In this document: one piece after another, positions 4,436-19,960 of the stretch
Position numbering within the stretch: position 1 is the first letter of the stretch
Layout: each line of letters starts with the position of its first letter
Source of the DNA: Octopus sinensis
Lineage: Eukaryota
Reading direction: 5' to 3'
Assembly (NCBI RefSeq): GCF_006345805.1
Contig: NC_043006.1
Span: 53,630,001-53,694,000 of the forward strand
Length of the DNA: 64,000 nucleotides
Made by a program: the position numbers and the translations under genes
Notes under the pieces: model-generated
What the model saw: only the letters and a program-made list of their open reading frames with translations
The model's database searches: none
What the model was told of the DNA's origin: nothing

Positions 4436-4975
4436 CAATTATAGGTGCAGGCAAAGCTGAGTGGTAAGAAGTATGCTTCCCAACTATATGGTTCTGAGTT
4501 CAGTCCCACTGCGTGGCATCTTGGGCAAGTGTCTTCTACCATAGCTGTTAAAAATGAATATTTAAATATATTATTATTCATACTGTGTAATGTGTAGGGG
4601 AAGAATTACAAAAGTTTGATAAATTTGCCAATATGCAAATTAGCTTACTTTCTTGTGTTTTAAACAATGTTTTCTCTGTAGGTAGCTATAAGTTCTGGTC
4701 TTTTGCCAGAACAGGCAGGTCAAGTCGAGCCTGACAATGGTGAACACATTTTAAAACCAGTTATTTCAGTAACCTTGCTGTTTAGCTATAACCAATTGAG
4801 TGTATCTCTAAAGATGCATTCCACACACACACACATATGAACAAAGTTAACAGTCTTTGTGTGTTTTTGAATAGCTAATATGTGCCTTCCATACTGTTAT
4901 TGTTATAGTTTCAACACATTTGTCTCAGATGTAATCACTTGCCAAACAAGTACACCTCTGAAATATATATGGATA

Positions 4976-5036
<61 letters not shown>

Positions 5037-5176
5037 ATCTATCCATTTATTTGAATATCTATCTCTCTATCTATGTACCTATCTATTTATCTGTCTGTCT
5101 GTCTATATCTATCTATCTATCTATCTGTCTGTCTATCTCTCTATCTATCTGTCTATCTCTATCTATCTATCTATTT
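4976..5176. repeat. Compound microsatellite (CT)n-(AT)n-(CTAT/CTGT)n
   Basis: Directly visible; it generates the spurious ORFs 4880..5200 and 4939..5310. Confidence 0.95.
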
Positions 5177-5728
5177 GTGTGTTTGTGTGTATTTGTTTAA
5201 ACATTGACAACTGTATGATTGTATTGAATAGTTTAAAGTATAGAAATAAATACAATATAGTCCTGATATATTATTTGATTATGCCCAAACTTTGTTGGCC
5301 TAAATTATAGCATTAAAAAAAATCAATAAACTGAAAATTAGTATCTGTGTTATGGTTGATAATTATTGAGATTATTGACAAAAGTGGAAGGGGTTGATAT
5401 TTCTGTCATAATTGTGGCTTTAATAATTGTAGGTTAGTGGAGAGGGCATTACTGGTAGTGAGCCTGTCAGGCAAATACTTCGTTATTCATATGCCATACT
5501 GTTTTGTATTATAACCTTACTAGGCTGGGACTCTACACATCATCCTTCAGTCATTCTAATAAATATCAAATATATATATATATTATATATATATATATAT
5601 AAAAAGGGAACTCCATTATCTATACTGGTTCTCTCTTTCTGCCTTTCTCCCTCCCCCTCTCTCCTCATTTCTTCTAGCATTCACTCTGTCTAGTCAAGAG
5701 ATAACTGCAATATCATTATTATTATTAT

Positions 5729-8352: not shown

Positions 8353-9055
8353 GTCAGTATAAATTTATTTTATTGTTATAATCATAATCATTGTTACCTT
8401 GACTACTATAGCCATTAGCATCATTATAACAGCTGTTTTTCTTAATACTATAACAGTAAGCAAAATGATAATAGCTGTTATTTCTATCACATACAGCCAT
8501 GTCTGCAAGGTTAAGAAGCTTGCTCTCCAATCATGTGATCTTTGGTTCAGTCCCACTGCCCAGCACCTTGGGTGTCTTGTTCTATAGTTCTACTATAGCT
8601 CCAGGCCAAGCAAAACTTTCTGAGTAGATTTGATAGATAGAAACTGCAAAATGCCTTCATATCATCATTGTCATTGTCATTTAATGTCTGCCTTCCATGA
8701 TGATGTGAGTTGGATTGTTTGACAGGAACTGATGAGTCCAGTGGATTGCACTGAGTTCTACTGCCTATTTTAGCAAGGAATCTATAGCTGGATGTCCTTT
8801 CCAACCTCATATACATACACACACATATATATAGAGAGAGAGAGGGTGGGGAGATATCATCATTTAACATACAGTTCAACGAACTAGCAAACCTGTGGGC
8901 TGTGCTATAAGCTTCATGTTTTTTGTGTGTACCTTTATCCTGACATCACGTGATGGTTGCAAACTGCATTATCATCATCATCATCATAAAGCAATGTTAT
9001 TAATTTCTCGTCTTCTATGAAAAACATGTCTAGCCATGGGGAAATATTATCTTGT

Positions 9056-9333
9056 TGTAGTGAGTGCGCGATTTGAATATAGAGGCACCTACCTTCTCTT
9101 CGTAGTGACGGAGACCCTCCAGTGATGACTAGTCCTTCCTCACAGCCCTGACCCGAACACTAACGATAGCAGCTGCTAGCCCCAAACCCTTAGCGACATC
9201 CTCACACGTCTTGTCACCTGCACGACCCACGTTGGAAAGGGCAATTTCCGCTCCCTACGCATGCCTGACAGCTGACCCCTTCCGCTTGCCCCAGCTTCCG
9301 GTCAACGCACCTGGCTGCTGACGTCATCCCACA
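9056..9333 (-). repeat. 3' LTR of gypsy element 1
   Basis: Direct repeat of 12924-13201. Preceded on the element sense strand by a short purine-rich tract AGGGTGGCG (9334-9342), a probable PPT. Confidence 0.95.
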
Positions 9334-9409
9334 CGCCACCCTGATCTTAAAGATCACAATCTCTCCGCTCCATGTTGTAGTCCACCATCTAACCGGGAGA
9401 GCGCCTTGC

Positions 9410-9990
9410 TCATCGAGATCTTCTCAAGCTGGGCACCTCGTTCTCCCCCTCTCCAGAATCATCGTCCGTCGAAGCAACAATCCTGTGAAGGTCCAAGACG
9501 TGTCGTGGTGTTCCATCTACGGATACGTTGCTTCTGGAATTGATCGCCATCACCGTTCCTCTGCTCCATTGAGACGTACAGCGCGCCTTTGGTGGCTTGA
9601 CCCAGACTTCCTCCCCTATTTTCACGCGAACGGGTCCCTTCTCTTCTTCGTGACCCTCCGGCGCTTTGCTCGGGTGCCTCCATTCATATTTGAACACAGC
9701 TCTCTGCGGTACAGATTCCTCAGCTTGTCCGGATCGGGGAGACAAGTTGTACCAAAAAACTGCTTCAAGCGGCGAAATGTGCCCCCTTTCCGCTATGGCC
9801 TTGACTGTCCGATGGTGCCTCTCCACGATCCCGTTACCGCTCGGCCTATACACTGCTCTGAACAAGCGTCGCACATTCCACCGATCAAGCATAATCCTCA
9901 ATGCTTCCGAACGAAACGCCGCCCCGTTGTCCATCAGTAGTTCTTCCACGGGACCTCTTTCTAAAAATATCCCGTTCAGGATCTGCACGA
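9410..9990 (-). CDS. Integrase core and C-terminus, continuing pol in a shifted frame
   Basis: MDNGAAF (second D), GIVERHHRT (E) and the C-terminal IGEEVWVKPP...QWSRGTV module. Separated from the upstream pol by a frameshift near 9990. Confidence 0.88.
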
Positions 9991-12120
9991 TCTCAACTCC
10001 CTCCAAATGGCCAGCCTGCCCGGCCCACAGTCGACCATGGAGAGGTACATTCGCTGACGGTAGTGTGTCACATCCACAGCTAGCCTTTTCCAGTTCTGCT
10101 CCACGGAAAGGCTTCCCTGTTCATGCCCACACGGAGCAGGGTCGATGGACTGACACCTGTCGCAGCTCCCGACCACCTTCCGGACGCTTCTCCTAGTGAC
10201 GTCAGCATCAGTTTTTTTTGCTAGATACAGGGTCCTGTCCACACCCAGGTGATGCATAGCATGCAGTTTCTTCAGTTCAGAGTCATCCAACCGACACGCC
10301 GCAGCTATCCCTTTCCGGGCCTCCTCCGGTTCTTCTAACCACGCTCTTTTCACCCTGGTCAGTACGTCTGCCCTGTTTTTCTCCGAAGGCACGAAAACCA
10401 CGCTCAGCTTCAGTCCGAATTCGGCGATCAATTCACCTAGAACTCCTAGACGGCGCTTCACTAACATCTCCGCAGCACCTTTCGTCCGCACCCTCCTGTC
10501 ACCGGTGATCACCGATCCTACCCAGCCAAGCACAGTGGCCGAATCCGTCCGCATTTCAATCGTGAGCAGCCCCCATTTCAAGGCCAAGTTCACCCCTCTC
10601 AGCAGCGTGTCTAATTCGGCGACATTGATGTGGTTGAAATCATCTGCTTTCCGAAGCCAGGCCACGTCCTCCACCGCTGTGCCTTCGATTGCCAACACCA
10701 CCCCTATCGCTATACTGCTAGCATCACACCAGACAGTCCCGCATTTCGTCTTGGGCACGTACCAGTTCCCCCTGACCGGGTCTTCCGCTCTTGTCCTCTC
10801 TAGAATCTCCTGCATCATCGCCACCGTCCCTTCTCCCACCTTGTCGCCCCACCTCTCTCCTTCTGCTCGTCTCTTGGTGTAACTACACGCCGTGCGCAGC
10901 CATCCAGCGATCGGGTAATGACCGACCAACTTCCCACACACCGAGAACAGCTCTCTCCTGCTGACGCTGGAACTCAGCTCTAGGATTTCATTTCCTCTCC
11001 GGAACACCAATTCACCTGATCCATCTCTTCGCAGCTTCAGCCCCAGCGCGGCTCCCCCTTCAATCGACTCCGGTGGCTTAGCAATCAGTCCGAACTTCTC
11101 CAGATGTCTAACTACCTCGTCGGCTGGCACTACAGTTTCGTCCACCAAAATGTCGTCAATGTAGGAGCCGGTGGCCTTTCTAATCTTGCCGTCTTTCCCT
11201 AGGACGGACCTAAGCACTGCCGCCATGATCTTCAGAGCGGAATTCAGCCCAAAACCCAGCCTGGTTAGACAGTACGTCCGGTTCTTGTACCGCACCAGCT
11301 GATATTGCCATAGTTTGTCGCTCACATGGAGCTGCAAGTATGCCGATCTCAAGTCGACAATTGTCGCTGCCTCAGTCGACTGTCTCCACTTATGTAATGC
11401 CTCACCACAAACGTCTGTCGCCTCACCTCCCGTGTGACACGATATGTGCTGGTTTAGCTCCCTGAAGTCCAGCACCGGTCTGACTTTTCCCTTCGTAGGC
11501 TGCATCACCGCTATCAGGGGTAGCACTCCGCCCGCTACCTCCTCCTTCCACCTCTCCACCTCGTCTTCAAACTCGACCCTGGCGTGGCCTTTCAGGGTAT
11601 GCTGGTAACAGCTCACCCTGTTCTCCAGCGTCGGGGGCTCGTCCTTCCATCGCCACTCTATCGTCCACCGCTGACCATCGAACGCCGCCTGAAAGTCTTT
11701 GTCCTCGATGGTGTAAGCGGCGCAGTCCCTCGTGGGGCTCTGCTCTCTCTGGCGATCCTGACTCGCAGTGCACGACGCCCCCACGCTTCCGAACGTGACC
11801 TCATTTCCCACAACACTGACGCCACCGAGGCAGTTGATGGCGTCCATCCCCATCACCACATCAACTCCATCTATCACGCGTTCGGCCACAATTGCCTGCA
11901 GCCTTAGCGTCGCGCCGCGCACCACTATCTCTACCTTGCTGCTGCCTCTGCAACGGATTTCGCTGCCGTCGACCGCCCGGACACTACTCACCCCGTTCCA
12001 TTCCTTCGTCACCCTCGAAGTCACCAGGTTGGTCGTACAGCCCGTAACCACAAGGGCCTTGAACGTCTCCCCCTCAGCCTCCACGTCAATCAATGGCAGC
12101 GTCTCCAATAGCGCCTCTAC
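9976..12120 (-). CDS. pol: Pol: protease-RT-RNase H-integrase N-terminus (frameshifted)
   Basis: Protease site ALVVTG (the DTG Asp is replaced by Val). RT motifs VRPVLDFRELN, DLRSAYLQL, YIDDILV. RNase H motifs WCDAS, AELD, RTDS, NRADVLTR. Integrase HHCC (HAMHHLG...CDRC) and first catalytic D (LAVDVTH). The frame is open from 12120 with no in-frame ATG at the start. Confidence 0.9.
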   Translation of the reverse strand, partial: VEALLETLPLIDVEAEGETFKALVVTGCTTNLVTSRVTKEWNGVSSVRAVDGSEIRCRGSSKVEIVVRGATLRLQAIVAERVIDGVDVVMGMDAINCLGGVSVVGNEVTFGSVGASCTASQDRQREQSPTRDCAAYTIEDKDFQAAFDGQRWTIEWRWKDEPPTLENRVSCYQHTLKGHARVEFEDEVERWKEEVAGGVLPLIAVMQPTKGKVRPVLDFRELNQHISCHTGGEATDVCGEALHKWRQSTEAATIVDLRSAYLQLHVSDKLWQYQLVRYKNRTYCLTRLGFGLNSALKIMAAVLRSVLGKDGKIRKATGSYIDDILVDETVVPADEVVRHLEKFGLIAKPPESIEGGAALGLKLRRDGSGELVFRRGNEILELSSSVSRRELFSVCGKLVGHYPIAGWLRTACSYTKRRAEGERWGDKVGEGTVAMMQEILERTRAEDPVRGNWYVPKTKCGTVWCDASSIAIGVVLAIEGTAVEDVAWLRKADDFNHINVAELDTLLRGVNLALKWGLLTIEMRTDSATVLGWVGSVITGDRRVRTKGAAEMLVKRRLGVLGELIAEFGLKLSVVFVPSEKNRADVLTRVKRAWLEEPEEARKGIAAACRLDDSELKKLHAMHHLGVDRTLYLAKKTDADVTRRSVRKVVGSCDRCQSIDPAPCGHEQGSLSVEQNWKRLAVDVTHYRQRMYLSMVDCGPGRLAIWRELRSCRS

Positions 12121-12878
12121 TCATTTGAGGGGAAAGTTCGAGAGGCAACTTCCCCGCGGTCGTTTCCCTGGTCGCAATCACGGGCAATGTGCCCTGTCTG
12201 CCTGCATCGATAGCAAACGGGCCCCGGCTGCGTACAGTCCCGCGCCATGTGCGGTCCCTGGCATCTAAAACACCGTCCTGAGAATGGCCGCTCTCGTTGC
12301 ACGGTGAGCTTCTGTACCTCTTTCTCGGGACGTCGTCCGTCTTTACGCGCCTCCGTCACCACCATCGCTATCGCCTTCCGCCCAAAGTGTCTCGTCAATG
12401 CGCGAGCCTGAGCTACAAGTTCGCTCAATGACATCTTTTTAACCCCGGGCAGTCGTTGTAGGTGAATCCCTACATCGTCGGGGAACCCATTCACGAACGC
12501 CAGTCGGGCTGCTCTCTCCAGTCCTTCTCCGGCAAACCCGGCCAGAGTCGCTAGCCTTCTAGCTTCTGATGCAAAGTCGTCCACTTGGCCTCCCGTCCAC
12601 CTGATTGCACCTAGCTTAGCGAAAGCTGTGTACTCGCATTCCGTGTAGGCGTCACGCAAGCGTCGCTCTATATTCTCCTCGCTGAGCCGTTCCTCTTCAT
12701 CCATCTCTAGGTAGAGCGTCAATGCACTCCCTTCCAAATACAGCGCCATAAGACTCGCCACGTCGCTTATGCCCTGCAGTCTCGCCACCAGCCTGATTTT
12801 GCGAATCCAGGCCACTACATCGCCTTCGCCATTAAAAGGTCTGACGACGTCACTGGCGATCCTAATTTTTGCAGACAT
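12117..12878 (-). CDS. gag: Gag (253 aa) with two zinc knuckles
   Basis: CFRCQGPHMARDC (CX2CX3HX4C) and CYRCRQTGHIARDC (CX2CX4HX4C); first ORF after the 5' LTR. Confidence 0.92.
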   Translation of the reverse strand: MSAKIRIASDVVRPFNGEGDVVAWIRKIRLVARLQGISDVASLMALYLEGSALTLYLEMDEEERLSEENIERRLRDAYTECEYTAFAKLGAIRWTGGQVDDFASEARRLATLAGFAGEGLERAARLAFVNGFPDDVGIHLQRLPGVKKMSLSELVAQARALTRHFGRKAIAMVVTEARKDGRRPEKEVQKLTVQRERPFSGRCFRCQGPHMARDCTQPGPVCYRCRQTGHIARDCDQGNDRGEVASRTFPSNE

Positions 12879-12911
12879 CGTGTTGAAAAAAAATGCGAAT
12901 GTTTAAGAACG

Positions 12912-12923
12912 GCCGAAATAGCT
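12912..12923 (-). promoter_or_regulatory. Non-canonical primer-binding site AGCTATTTCGGC (complement of tRNA-Phe nt 1-12)
   Basis: Directly abuts the 5' LTR. Plus strand reads GCCGAAATAGCT, identical to the 5' 12 nt of vertebrate/insect tRNA-Phe-GAA as recalled. 11 of the 12 nt are repeated at the same position in element 2. Confidence 0.7.
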
Positions 12924-13201
12924 TGTAGTGAGTGCGCGATTTGAATATAGAGGCACCTACCTTCTCTTCGTAGTGACGGAGACCCTCCAGTGATGACTAG
13001 TCCTTCCTCACAGCCCCGACCCGAACACTAACGATAGCAGCTGCTAGCCCCAAACCCTTAGCGATGTCCTCACACGTCTTGTCACCTGCACGACCCACGT
13101 TGGAAAGGGCAATTTCCGCTCCCTGCGCATGCCTGACAGCTGACCCCTTCCGCTTGCCCCAGCTTCCGGTCAACGCACCCGGCTGCTGACGTCATCCCAC
13201 A
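12924..13201 (-). repeat. 5' LTR of gypsy element 1
   Basis: Direct repeat of 9056-9333; lies upstream of the gag ATG at 12878 on the minus strand. Confidence 0.95.
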
Positions 13202-13823
13202 CTTGTTTGAAAGGAGCTGAATATTAGCAACAGGAAAGGCATCTGACCATAGAAAATCTGCCTCAACAAATTCCATCTGACCTATACAAGCATGGAAAAG
13301 TGGACATTAAATGATGATGGTGATAACCTTTTGTGTCATCATAATATCTGTTATTTCTATTTCTATACTCACATAAAGAAGTGGTGCTTAGTGCATGAAA
13401 GAGTGCTGATCACATAAAATAGAGAGAAGTTGTGGAAAACAGAGACCCAGGAAAACATGGTACAAAGTATCGAAGGCTGTTCTCAAAACTCTGAGCCTTA
13501 CGAAAGATGACAGGTGACAGAGATATGTGGTACATTGCTGTATTCAAAGAGACCTGCCCACTACAACAGAATTTGTATCCTAAAATGAAGGGGCTTCATA
13601 AAAAGCATTGGGATTAGTGCTGGTGCCACATAAATAGCACTGGTGCTGGTGTCACTTAAAAAGCAGTCGTGATGGTACCACATAAAAACCACTGGTGATG
13701 GCGCCACTTAAAAAGTGCCCAGTACATTCTGCAAAGTGGTTGGTGTTAGGAAGGGCATCCAGCTGTAGAAACCAAGCCAAGCAGATTATGGGATCTTGTG
13801 CAGCCCTTGGCCTTATCAGTTCC

Positions 13824-15400: not shown

Positions 15401-16093
15401 GTCCTGTTTATGTTACCTATTTTGACCCTCTGCAAAATCCCAATTTTTATTTAATTTGCTTTGTGGGAGCAACTGTTTTATCAAAAACATATATTGTTGT
15501 TAAATGCTCGAAATACAAGACTAGAGAAACAGCCAACAACTGAGGAAGGGTCGTTCTTTATATTTGTTTTGTTTTCCATTTGTGTCTTTCATTGTTCAAA
15601 TCAATAGTTCATCTTCCATGTACTCATGCTTCATACTTTTCTGTTGTACACGTTTCATGACGTCCTGTGCCCACATATGCATATATACACATGATGGGCT
15701 TCTTTCAGTTTCCACCTACAAATTCCATTTACGAGGTTTTGATTGGCCCAAGGCTATAGTAGAAGACATTTGCCTTTCGCCCCAGGTGCCACTCAGTGGG
15801 ACTGAACCTGGAACCATGTGGTTGAGAAGCAAACTTCTTACTACTCAAACCACCCCAGCATCTACACACTGTGTGTGTGTGTGTGTAACCTTTATACAGG
15901 TGTGTGGTTCACCTTCACCTTGAACTAACCCTTGGTGTGTCAAGACAGATTTAGAATAAATGTCTAGTGCCATCATTGTTTAATATTTTACTTGTGTGTT
16001 GACATTCGATGGACAGCTGAGTGTGATTTCTCCACCAGTTCAACTTTGTGTTTGACAATTCAGCTCCTGTTGAAAGCATGAAAAACAAGTCCT

Positions 16094-16207
<114 letters not shown>

Positions 16208-17003
16208 CATAAACATCTCAATGTACCATCCATGCTGGGTAAATAAGTAACTCTCTCATCTGAGCTACATCTTAGGACTGCTACGCCTCATCTTTAACAC
16301 CCTCTCTTATTTTCTATCATTCTCATCACCCTGTAGCTTCCATTAAGCCCCTTTGACCTCCATCTCTGTCCCTGTAGACAAACACATAGGACTGGGAGAA
16401 GTGGGGGGGGGCACATTAAAGGATTGACTTAGGACTTTGAATATCTTCACTCTAGACCCATATATATTGTTAAGTATGTCATAGAACTGCTTTTATTGCA
16501 TAATTCAAATTTTATTCTGCTTATGTTGCACCTTTGCAAACCAGTGTGTAGTTTATACATTCTCTGTATATACTTCAGACTAGCTGATTTGATTTCATTT
16601 TGGAAATGACATGAGTGTGTGACATTAAGAAGCAACAACAATGGCAAATTACATATCTATCACTCTCGCTGTCACTTCTGGGGTAATTTCATTTTGCTTA
16701 GCTCTGTAGTATATTGTTTCTTAACACAACACATGTATGAAGGTATTTTTCCTTGATGAAACCACAGCCTCTGGCTGTTCAACTACACATCTACATTGAG
16801 TATGACATTTTGATAAAGTTTTTGTGTTGTTGAATATCTATCTGTTTTAACTGGGGGGAAAAAAAATTAATGTCACAAAACAAATAGATAAAAATAAGAA
16901 ATTAACTGTGAACCACCTTTCAATAATGGCTGTCGTAGCAGTTCTTGGGTCAATATCCAAATAATAGACTAATGGAGTTTGTGTTCATACGTTTATATAC
17001 ATT

Positions 17004-17375: not shown

Positions 17376-17770
17376 TTATCCTTAACATTTGCTTTTCCAT
17401 TATGGCATGGGTGGGACAGACCTTCTCCACCACAGCATCTTGCCATTTTGTTGTAGCCTATGGTTATCTTCTTAATGGAGCCTAGCAATCTGAGATAAGA
17501 CTTCTTTACCACTTAGTGTATATGCATATGTGTTTTTATGTAATTCATAAATATGTATTGCAGGGGTGGCTGTATGGTTAAGAAGCTTGCTTCTCAACAA
17601 TATGGTCTTGGGTTCAGTCCCATAGCATGGCTCTCGAGCAAATGTCTTCTATTATAGTCCCAGGCCAACCAAAGCTTTGTGAGTGGATTTGATTGATGGA
17701 AACTAAAAATAAGCTCATCATGTATGTATGTGTGTGTGTGTATGTGTGTGTGTATATATGTATGTATGTA

Positions 17771-17832
<62 letters not shown>

Positions 17833-19084
17833 TATACATATATATATATAATGCAGGGGTGGGAGCTGTGAGATTCTATGTGTGTTCTTATCTAGACGTC
17901 ATGTGGTGCTTGTAAATGAGAATCATCATCATACAGGCAAGGTTGTTTAAATCCAATCTTCCATGGGAAAGTATTACCTTGCTTGAAAACAGAAGAAGGT
18001 TGGTGATAAGAAAGTCACCTGGCCATAGAGAACCTGCCTCAGCAAAATTCCAGATCACTCAGGCATGTGTGGCAAAATGAACATTAAATAATGATATTCT
18101 GTTGTATCTCAGGATGGTCAGTTATGCCAATAATAAATACGTAGTCTGGTTCTACTTCACTTCCTTAGTTTTATTTAACCAATTTAGTAATTGATTGTTT
18201 GATTAATCATTCAGTCAATCATTCGAGTCATCATTCATGACCTCATCAATGACATACCGTCTCTACTCCAGGTTTGTGAATGGCAACAAAAGGACTTTCT
18301 AAAGGATATATCTAACTGATTGAGTTACCAAATGATTAATGAAACATCATCATCATCATTTAACATGTTTTCCATGCTGTCATGGGTTGGATGATCTGAC
18401 CGGAATTGGCAAGCTGGAGAGCTGCACCAGGTTCTAGTCTGATCTGGTTTGGTTTCTATGGCTGGATGCCCTTCCTAATGCCAACTGCTTTACAAAGTGA
18501 GCTAGAATCTTTTAACAAAGCACCAGCACAAGTTCTGTTATAAGGCACTGGTACAGGACTCTTACAGGCCAATCCTCTTCACCAGAGAATGCAACCTTAA
18601 CTTCTGCTGTGGAAGATGGGTCTTCTTGAGTGCAAAGACCATTGGTTAGATCGGTTAGATAATTGGTTAAATACTTAATCAATTGACAAATAAAAATAAA
18701 TGAAATAGAACCAGTGTATCTATCATTAGCATAATGACCTTGCTGTGATGCAACAGAATATGTTTCAACAAATGAGTTTGAATCAATTCCTGCAAAACCA
18801 AACACACAAATGAAATATGTATACATATCTTTTTTTTATTTATCTCTTACTTGATTGAGTCATCAAACTGTGGTCATGCTGGGGCACTACCTTGAACAGT
18901 TCAGTTAAATAAATCGACCTTAGTACTTATCTTTTTTTAACGTTTGATAAGTTATTGTCAGTCTCTTTTACTGAACCACTAGGTTATGGAAAATATAAAC
19001 AAATTGTGGGAGATAACTACACCAATAGTGGGGAGCAGACACACACACACACACAGACATACAACAGGCTTTCTCACAGTTTTC

Positions 19085-19960
19085 AACTGAGATCAAAAGA
19101 AAAATATTTACTTTGAAGAAATGTGCTAGCACAGCAAATTTAATCTAGTCCATTGTAGCAAGGAGTGGCTGTGTGGTAAGTAGCTTGCTTACCAACCACA
19201 TGGTTCCGGGTTCAATCCCACTGCGTGGCACCTTGGGCAAGTAGAAGCTACTATAGCCTCGGGCCAACCAAAGCCTTGTGAGTGGATTTGGTAGACGGAA
19301 ACTGAAAGAAGCCCATCGTATATATGTATGTGTGTGTCTGTGTTTGTCTCCCCAACATTACTTGACAACCAATGCTGGTGTGTTTACATCCCCGTAACTT
19401 AGCAATTTCGGCAAAAGAGACCAATAGAATAAGTACTAAGCTTACAAAGAATAAATCCTGGGGTCGATTTGCTCAACTAAAGGCGGTGCTCCAGCATGGC
19501 TGCAGTCAAATGACTGAAACAAGTAAAAGAGTACCAAATTCACAGAAAACACAGGTGCCTAGCCTAAATATATACCTGTTTAGAAGAATTATAAGTAATC
19601 CAAATTCAGATGAATGGGTAAGTAGACATGTGATATATGTGTATGAGAAAATGTGGTTTTGAAAATCTCCCTGAAATCACAAATCAATATGAGCAGAAAG
19701 AATAGTTATCAACTAAATGTATTACATGGCTATTTTTATTATTTTTGTTTATTATTATTTCTTTCTATATCCTCAAGAGCTACTGGGAATATATGCAGCT
19801 GTAGTTTCTACATAAATAATTTTGGTATATATTACTGCAGTAGATGAACCACTAGCAACCTCCCCACTCTTCCTGGCCACCACTTGCTACAATGAACTAG
19901 ATTAAATTTGCTGTGCTAGCACGTTTCTTCAAAGTAAATATTTTCCTTTTGATCTCAGTT
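19085..19960. repeat. 78-bp inverted repeat pair (19085-19162 / 19883-19960) enclosing a SINE
   Basis: The arms are reverse complements with 3 mismatches. Confidence 0.9.
19160..19528 (+). mobile_element. tRNA-derived SINE (family B, GGAGTGGCTGTGTGGTAAG head; ...GACTGAAACAAGTAAAAGA tail)
   Basis: Homologous copies at 21100-21490 (-), 22020-22260 (-, partial), 34350-34690, 38390-38730 and 17560-17730. Confidence 0.85.

What the first reader, a model, noticed from the sequence alone, without database searches (positions are those of the whole stretch)
12912..12923. Gypsy primer-binding site complementary to the 5' 12 nt of tRNA-Phe, not to a tRNA 3' end
Seen: the element sense strand reads ...CA|AGCTATTTCGGC directly after the 5' LTR, with no TGG and no spacer. 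Established: canonical PBSs pair with the tRNA 3'-CCA end. Copia and Ty5 use a tRNA-iMet half cut in the anticodon arm. Tf1 self-primes with the first 11 nt of its own RNA, released by RNase H cleavage. Vertebrate/insect tRNA-Phe-GAA begins GCCGAAAUAGCU-CAG (recalled), a 12/12 match whose pairing stops exactly at the LTR edge. Inference: this lineage primes minus-strand synthesis with a ~12-nt 5' tRNA fragment cut in the D-stem, like a trans version of Tf1 priming. I do not know a description of this mode but cannot exclude a prior Repbase or literature note.
Basis: partly seen in the sequence, partly recalled or inferred. Interest (0 to 1): 0.88.

Follow-up and report, generated by a model that had tools for sequence, protein, structure and literature searches.

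The report
Retrotransposon primed from tRNA-Phe's 5' end
A small retrovirus-like jumping gene in this octopus-type genome, and a large group of its relatives across animals, has a primer site matching the first 12 bases of phenylalanine tRNA instead of a tRNA's 3' tail, which points to a way of starting reverse transcription that I could not find described.

Summary
On the minus strand lies a 4.15-kb LTR retrotransposon with 278-nt LTRs and a 5-bp target duplication. The 12 bases directly after its 5' LTR (window 12923..12912) are the exact complement of nt 1-12 of the host's own tRNA-Phe-GAA genes. There is no TGG and no room for another primer site before the gag ATG.

The same 12-mer sits at the same place in at least 10 unrelated-looking LTR families of this genome (271 exact hits against 1 in the control). 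It also occurs in Hydra, a leafhopper and about 20 metagenomic families with only 35-52% pol identity. Only tRNA positions 5-7 vary. No Tf1-type self-complement exists.

New here: a sister clade of longer elements carries an ordinary primer site for the 3' end of the same tRNA-Phe, in all 5 copies read. So this group of elements uses tRNA-Phe, and the compact clade switched to its other end.

Best reading (0.75): the minus-strand primer is a 12-nt 5' fragment of tRNA-Phe cut between nt 12 and 13. How it is cut is only inferred.

The scan found this before on five other copies in this genome. Ten paper searches found no description.

The parts
13202..13206 (-). 5' target-site duplication ACAAG
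   Evidence: Same 5 bases directly outside both LTRs
12924..13201 (-). 5' LTR, 278 nt, TGT...ACA
   Evidence: Direct repeat with 9056-9333, 5 differences = 1.8%
12912..12923 (-). Primer-binding site AGCTATTTCGGC, complementary to nt 1-12 of host tRNA-Phe-GAA
   Evidence: Conserved at this place in relatives
12879..12911 (-). 33-nt leader between primer site and gag ATG, with no TGG
   Evidence: Read directly
12117..12878 (-). gag ORF, 253 aa, CCHC zinc knuckle
   Evidence: zf-CCHC E 7e-10
9976..12108 (-). pol ORF, 710 aa: protease (DTG), RT (YIDD), DUF7047, RNase H (RVT_3 type), start of integrase. It is in another frame than gag
   Evidence: Model of RT-RNase H has pLDDT 89
9410..10006 (-). 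Rest of integrase (rve core) in a shifted frame: this copy's pol is broken by a frameshift near 9976-10006
   Evidence: Relatives have one pol of 930-995 aa
9334..9356 (-). Palindromic hairpin TGATCTTTAAGATCA (9356..9342) followed by G-rich run GGGTGGCG (9341..9334): the likely plus-strand primer site (PPT)
   Evidence: Motif conserved just before the 3' LTR in Hydra and at least 7 metagenomic families, with a compensatory stem change in L044
9056..9333 (-). 3' LTR, 278 nt
9051..9055 (-). 3' target-site duplication ACAAG

Best explanation
The window holds a defective copy of a compact (about 4.1 kb) LTR retrotransposon. Its minus-strand primer-binding site pairs with the first 12 nucleotides of cytoplasmic tRNA-Phe: the whole 5' strand of the acceptor stem, nt 8-9, and three bases of the D stem. 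DNA synthesis must start at the base next to the LTR, so the primer must end with a 3'-OH at tRNA nt 12. That means tRNA-Phe is cut between U12 and C13. The 12-nt fragment primes strong-stop DNA. Its natural 5' end then stops plus-strand copying, so a 12-nt site is regenerated for the second strand transfer. These steps are inferred. I think the cut is most likely made after annealing by the element's own RNase H, as in Tf1 self-priming, where an 11-bp RNA duplex is cut at its end. This last step has about 0.4 confidence; a host nuclease is the alternative. The mode arose inside a tRNA-Phe-primed group of elements whose sister clade still uses the tRNA's 3' end.
For: Shown: (1) 12/12 complementarity to nt 1-12 of the host's tRNA-Phe genes, at offset 0 from an independently defined LTR edge. 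(2) No TGG or other candidate site lies in the 33-nt leader. In relatives the 12-mer lies 0-60 nt from the gag ATG, and in L055 and L060 it abuts it. (3) There are 271 exact genomic hits against 1 in the control. At least 10 families in this genome with unrelated LTR ends and leaders share the 12-mer. (4) Hydra has the same 12-mer starting at the first base after 100%-identical LTRs, and a leafhopper copy has it too. All 13 metagenome loci that include the start of gag have it, at 40-52% pol identity, and flanks show no conservation beyond ACA upstream and none downstream of base 12. (5) Variants differ only at tRNA positions 5-6 (7): TT, CG, CA, CC and one ACA. These types are scattered over the pol tree, as expected for a site reset by a host molecule. 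(6) The sister clade has ordinary sites for the 3' end of the same tRNA: L117 18/18 including CCA, L120 13 nt, and L121, L118 and L115 with one change each. (7) The family is alive: several genomic copies have uninterrupted pol frames, and a CC-type family is held by 16 jellyfish metatranscriptome runs. From established knowledge: the Tf1 mechanism (PMC7175516).
Against: There is no biochemical evidence: no primer, strong-stop DNA or cut tRNA was seen. A 12-nt tRNA-Phe fragment ending at nt 12 is not a known tRNA fragment class (my knowledge). The octopus genome itself has no tRNA with those 5' ends. Part of the conservation statistic is circular, since the junctions were collected with a pattern fixing bases 1-5 and 9-12. 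The root of the pol tree is unknown, so the direction of the 3'-to-5' switch is inferred.
Confidence: 0.75

Rival explanations
1. The primer is the same 12-nt tRNA-Phe 5' piece, but a host nuclease makes it before packaging (a very short 5' tRNA fragment). The element only captures it. This resembles copia, whose tRNA-iMet fragment has been proposed to come from a host activity.
For: It fits all the comparative data as well as the main reading does. tRNA 5' fragments are common in animal cells (my knowledge).
Against: Known 5' fragments are cut in the D loop or anticodon loop and are 14 nt or longer (my knowledge). Any longer fragment would leave an unpaired 3' tail, because every LTR ends in ACA and not in the complement of tRNA nt 13-15.
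Confidence: 0.3
2. Tf1-type self-priming: the 12-mer pairs with the 5' end of the element's own transcript, and the match to tRNA-Phe is coincidence.
For: The site length (12 nt against 11 in Tf1) and its position are Tf1-like. The window LTR has a 9/12 look-alike at 13119..13108 (read by eye).
Against: No relative holds the sense 12-mer (up to 1 mismatch) anywhere in its contig, including loci with complete LTRs. A 9/12 match in a 278-nt LTR is expected by chance about 1 time in 10 (my estimate). A self-primer would co-vary with each LTR, yet the site is identical across families with unrelated LTRs.
Confidence: 0.03
3. The 12-mer is a conserved cis signal for something else, such as packaging, dimerisation or gag translation. 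Priming would then happen by an unknown route.
For: It lies in the leader, where such signals sit, and it is close to the gag ATG.
Against: It starts exactly at the LTR edge, which is set by where the primer's 3' end sits. It ends exactly at tRNA nt 1. There is no other candidate primer site. The sister clade's ordinary tRNA-Phe site makes a chance match to the same tRNA very unlikely.
Confidence: 0.04

Closest known systems
Tf1/sushi self-priming LTR retrotransposons (S. pombe Tf1)
   Same: A short primer (11 against 12 nt) taken from the very 5' end of an RNA. The primer site directly abuts the LTR. A cut at the end of an RNA:RNA duplex is needed. Plus-strand copying stops at the primer's natural 5' end (PMC7175516).
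   Different: Here the RNA is a host tRNA acting in trans, not the element's own transcript. The pol belongs to a different lineage with an RVT_3/RNase_H-type RNase H, and Pfam finds no chromodomain.
copia / Ty5 / Tca2-type priming by a tRNA 5' fragment (my knowledge)
   Same: A host tRNA is cut, and the 5' piece rather than the CCA end provides the 3'-OH.
   Different: Those use tRNA-iMet or tRNA-Arg cut in the anticodon arm at about nt 39, and the site pairs with the fragment's internal 3' part. Here the cut is in the D stem at nt 12, the whole fragment including nt 1 is paired, and the tRNA is Phe. The gene order also differs: integrase comes last here.
Ordinary tRNA 3'-end priming by tRNA-Phe, as in the sister clade found here (L115, L117, L118, L120, L121). 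Mouse IAP elements also use the tRNA-Phe 3' end (my knowledge).
   Same: Same tRNA species and same acceptor stem. The pol family is related (DUF7047).
   Different: The opposite strand of the acceptor stem is used. There is no TGG, no spacer, the site is 12 rather than up to 18 nt, and the tRNA has to be cut.
Ty3/Gypsy (Metaviridae) clades reported in molluscs, e.g. Cigr-1 and MolGy clades (PMC6238403)
   Same: LTRs, gag with CCHC, and the order PR-RT-RH-IN. That paper lists small Gypsy families in Octopus bimaculoides.
   Different: I could not test whether this clade is one of them, because no reference sequences were on hand. The paper has no primer-site analysis. This clade lacks the RT_RNaseH Pfam families typical of Gypsy.

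Membership tests
LTR retrotransposon (order PR-RT-RH-IN) | Two direct LTRs ending TG...CA with a short target-site duplication | tested here: met
   278-nt LTRs, TGT...ACA, 98.2% identical, 5-bp ACAAG duplication
LTR retrotransposon (order PR-RT-RH-IN) | gag with zinc knuckle, then protease, RT, RNase H and integrase in that order | tested here: met
   Pfam hits and alignment motifs DTG, YIDD, HHCC, DDE. The RT-RNase H model matches CaMV, HIV, foamy and XMRV RTs
LTR retrotransposon (order PR-RT-RH-IN) | Purine-rich plus-strand primer site directly before the 3' LTR | tested here: inconclusive
   A short G-rich run (GGGTGGCG here, GGGGAGG in relatives) lies behind a conserved hairpin. It is short, and in this copy it is interrupted
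Ty3/Gypsy (Metaviridae) in the strict sense | RT-RNase H of the Gypsy type (Pfam RT_RNaseH / RT_RNaseH_2) and RT placement inside Metaviridae | tested here: not met
   No RT_RNaseH family appears in the window pol or in about 240 listed relatives. The RNase H matches RVT_3/RNase_H, and RVT_1 is only weak. An RT phylogeny with reference elements was not possible
BEL/Pao | Pfam Peptidase_A17 / DUF1758-type pol signature | tested here: not met
   Absent from all Pfam lists
Odin / retrovirus-like elements with a dual RNase H | A degenerate RNase H 'tether' plus a second RNase H | tested here: not met
   The model shows fingers, palm and thumb followed by one RNase H. The best full-length match is CaMV RT, TM 0.70. 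DUF7047 covers the thumb and linker
Tf1/sushi self-priming group | Primer site complementary to the first 11 nt of the element's own RNA (inside the 5' LTR) | tested here: not met
   No sense copy of the 12-mer with up to 1 mismatch in any relative. Only 9/12 in the window LTR
Tf1/sushi self-priming group | RNase H-dependent cut at the end of the RNA:RNA duplex | not testable with these tools
   Needs biochemistry
Ordinary tRNA 3'-end priming | Site starting TGG, complementary to ...CCA-3', within a few bases of the LTR | tested here: not met
   No TGG between the LTR and the gag ATG. It is met in the sister clade
copia/Ty5-type tRNA-fragment priming | Site complementary to the anticodon-arm region of tRNA-iMet (or Arg) | tested here: not met
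   The complementarity is to nt 1-12 of tRNA-Phe

The most novel reading that the evidence does not exclude
A widespread clade of compact LTR retrotransposons starts reverse transcription from a 12-nt primer. The element's own RNase H carves this primer out of full-length tRNA-Phe after its 5' end anneals to the leader, which is a trans version of Tf1 self-priming. The mode evolved from an ordinary tRNA-Phe 3'-end-primed ancestor by switching to the other strand of the same acceptor stem.
Probability: 0.35. Interest if true: 0.88.

Novelty: new variant of a known kind. Interest (0 to 1): 0.78.

Why it matters
Textbook accounts give three ways for LTR elements to start minus-strand synthesis: a tRNA 3' end, a tRNA fragment cut in the anticodon arm, or Tf1 self-priming. 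A fourth way would add a new case to how RTs and RNase H select and shape primers. It uses the very 5' end of a tRNA and is found in hundreds of families from cnidarians to cephalopods and insects.

The sister clade, which uses the 3' end of the same tRNA, offers a natural before-and-after pair for experiments.

There is also a practical side. Standard annotation looks only for complements of tRNA 3' ends; for example, the 12 nt at the 3' end were used in PMC13524379. Such elements are therefore scored as lacking a primer site and may be filtered out.

Finally, it raises the question whether 5' fragments of tRNA-Phe help or restrain these elements, as 3' fragments restrain mouse ERVs (PMC7472051).

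Tried and rejected
1. Covariation test. I found runs holding a CC-type family and tried to lay them on the octopus tRNA-Phe locus to read the host's tRNA.

2. A viral-contig scan found no relatives.

3. A PDB sequence search with pol found nothing at E 0.01.

4. The idea that DUF7047 is a second, degenerate RNase H (Odin or retrovirus-like) was rejected by the model.

5. Self-priming was rejected.

6. A TATA-like TATATT lies 25 nt before the LTR end. It is too close to the edge to leave an R region, and no inference was drawn from it. The bacterial promoter scan was irrelevant.

7. ARAGORN found no tRNA gene in the window or in 19 relatives' loci.

8. Whether the clade equals the Cigr-1 or a MolGy clade of PMC6238403 could not be tested. 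The original Cigr-1 paper is not held.

9. The hairpin before the PPT is not unusually stable against shuffles (z -1.5 to +0.6). Its support is conservation and one compensatory change, not energy.

10. Ten paper searches found no description of a primer site for a tRNA 5' end. Subscription journals and Repbase notes were not searchable.

Full report
**What is in the window.** Between 9051 and 13206, on the minus strand, lies a complete LTR retrotransposon of 4146 bp, or 4156 bp with its target duplications.

- The LTRs are 13201..12924 and 9333..9056. Each is 278 nt, reads TGT...ACA, and the two differ at 5 positions.
- The 5-bp duplication ACAAG flanks the element.
- The inside encodes gag (12878..12117, CCHC knuckle) and pol in another frame (12108..9976).
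- Pol has protease, RT, DUF7047, an RNase H of the RVT_3 type and the start of integrase. The integrase core continues in a shifted frame (10006..9410), so this copy is defective.
- Relatives have one pol of 930-995 aa, and several copies in this genome have uninterrupted pol frames.

**The observation.** The 12 bases directly after the 5' LTR read AGCTATTTCGGC (12923..12912). The host genome is 2.72 Gb and octopus-like by its SINEs. It has at least 150 sites with the 19-mer that begins with the reverse complement of this 12-mer. ARAGORN calls tRNA-Phe (GAA) genes that start at the first base of the match in all four loci scanned (five genes). A local comparison gives 12 of 12, offset 0 from the LTR, tRNA positions 1-12. 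The 33-nt leader up to the gag ATG holds no TGG, so an ordinary site for a CCA end is not present.

**Conservation in this genome.** Within the window's own family, 26 LTR-to-leader junctions were read. Of these, 22 have the exact 12-mer and 4 differ at one base: three by CG-to-TG decay and one by a G-to-T change. One further LTR end read was a 3' LTR followed by flanking DNA. That says little, because the flanks of these junctions are equally conserved. The stronger evidence is genome-wide. The 15-mer ACA+12-mer occurs 271 times in the genome against 1 for the reversed control. The 30 places I read belong to at least 10 families whose LTR ends and leaders are unrelated.

**Conservation outside this genome.**
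- A Hydra vulgaris copy has 100%-identical 202-nt LTRs and a 5-bp duplication. The 12-mer starts at the first base after the independently found LTR.
- A leafhopper copy has it too.
- Of the 41 metagenome loci with 40-52% pol identity, all 13 that include the start of gag carry a 12-mer of this kind after ...ACA and 0-60 nt before the ATG. Eleven more show it after pol in circularly permuted contigs.
- One element at 35% identity has it as well (L116).
- Across 30 mutually dissimilar junctions nothing is conserved upstream beyond the LTR's ACA, with a weak AC[TC] before it, and nothing downstream of base 12.

**Variants.** The site reads AGCTAT-TT-CGGC in octopus, Hydra, the leafhopper and many metagenome families. 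Others have CG, CA or CC at those two bases. One has AGCTAACACGGC, and one (L044) has AGCTATTCTTTC directly after its LTR.
- The changes fall in the part that pairs with the middle or 5' part of the acceptor stem. The part that pairs with U8-U12 is fixed.
- Types are scattered on the pol tree. For example, a TT family and a CG family are sisters at 100% support. That fits a site reset by a host molecule rather than inherited with pol.
- The octopus genome has no real tRNA with those variant 5' ends, and only 3 hits to the C-N pattern, of which just one (CA) is a variant type seen elsewhere, against 271 TT.
- The CC type is held by 16 jellyfish-holobiont metatranscriptome runs and 4 runs of one coded organism, so it is expressed.

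**Rivals.** Tf1-type self-priming needs the sense 12-mer at the transcript start. No relative has it with up to one mismatch. The window LTR has only a 9/12 look-alike, which is expected by chance about once in ten such LTRs. A cis signal with another role does not explain why the block starts at the LTR edge and ends at tRNA nt 1.

**New here: a sister clade.** A full search of 1.84 billion representatives gave 3889 relatives at E 1e-3 and 575 at 1e-30. The more distant ones with fused gag-pol of 1340-1420 aa form a clade separated from the compact clade by a 100%-supported branch. All five that I could read have an ordinary primer site for the 3' end of the same tRNA:
- L117: 18 of 18 to tRNA-Phe nt 59-76 including CCA, 5 nt after the LTR.
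- L120: 13 nt.
- L121, L118 and L115: the same site with one change each.

So the whole DUF7047 group is tied to tRNA-Phe. The compact clade pairs with the other strand of its acceptor stem. This is independent support that the 12-mer is about tRNA-Phe. The tree is unrooted, and L116 sits on a long branch, so the direction of the switch is inferred.

**Mechanism.** What is shown is the complementarity, its register and its conservation. The rest is inferred. The primer's 3'-OH must lie at tRNA nt 12, so tRNA-Phe is cut between U12 and C13. The 12-nt RNA primes strong-stop DNA. Plus-strand synthesis later runs off the primer's natural 5' end and rebuilds a 12-nt site for the second jump. This resembles Tf1, where RNase H cuts an 11-bp RNA duplex at its end (PMC7175516). 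A fragment longer than 12 nt could not prime without trimming, because all LTRs end in ACA, which does not pair with tRNA nt 13-15. Whether the element's RNase H or a host nuclease makes the cut is open.

**What lineage it is.** The gene order is that of Gypsy, BEL and retroviruses. None of about 240 relatives shows the Gypsy RT_RNaseH families or the BEL Peptidase_A17 family. The RNase H is of the RVT_3/RNase_H type. A confident model (pLDDT 89) shows RT with thumb plus a single RNase H. Its best full-length match is CaMV RT (TM 0.70), followed by HIV, foamy and XMRV RTs. It is therefore not an Odin-like dual-RNase-H element (PMC9040795). 'Gypsy' is right only loosely. I could not test identity with the Cigr-1 or MolGy clades reported for octopus (PMC6238403).

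**Novelty.** Ten paper searches found nothing on a primer site for a tRNA 5' end. They included the site's own sequence, tRNA-Phe with primer-site terms, and phrases for unusual priming. Surveys look only at tRNA 3' ends (PMC13524379). Older subscription papers and Repbase notes could not be searched. The scan itself has reported the same thing on five other copies in this genome. I re-tested their claims rather than relying on them.

Noticed in passing
window 9334-9356 (minus strand); also L112:5628-5650, L050:5439-, L052:3186- and 7199-, L057:2190-, L061:2623-, L067:1777-, L068:1863-, L044:3013-3036: Just before the 3' LTR, many families share a small palindromic hairpin (TGATC-N3-5-GATCA) followed by a short G-rich run and then the LTR's TGT. 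In L044 the stem reads TGAACT...AGTTCA, a compensatory change. It is probably a structured plus-strand primer site. I know of no description.
   Followed up: partly
L115, L117, L118, L120, L121 (relatives' loci): A sister clade has fused gag-pol of about 1340-1420 aa and an ordinary primer site for the 3' end of tRNA-Phe, 2-5 nt after the LTR. It forms a natural comparison pair for the 5'-end mode.
   Followed up: yes
L046 /: The CC-type family is present in 16 'jellyfish metagenome' metatranscriptome runs at 0.93-0.96 of its words, so it is transcribed. The host is the jellyfish or a partner in its holobiont.
   Followed up: partly
L052:1-8081 and L053:1-6773: Two primer sites lie 4013 and 4061 nt apart with identical LTR ends. 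These are either tandem elements sharing an LTR or an assembly that loops through the LTR. Many about 4-kb contigs are circular permutations of the element.
   Followed up: no
window 4456-4545 and 19168-19257: Two copies (81% alike) of a tRNA-derived SINE-like repeat with a GGTTC...GGTTCA...TCCCAC box. It is typical of octopus genomes by my recollection and suggests the host.
   Followed up: no
window 4955-5225, 16085-16250, 17714-17840: Long CT, TA and TG/TATC microsatellite tracts.
   Followed up: no
G000:C15:43562502-43579097: A tandem array of about 80 or more tRNA-Phe genes spaced about 200 bp apart, plus smaller clusters on C6 and C15. This is a very high tRNA-Phe gene number in the host.
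   Followed up: no
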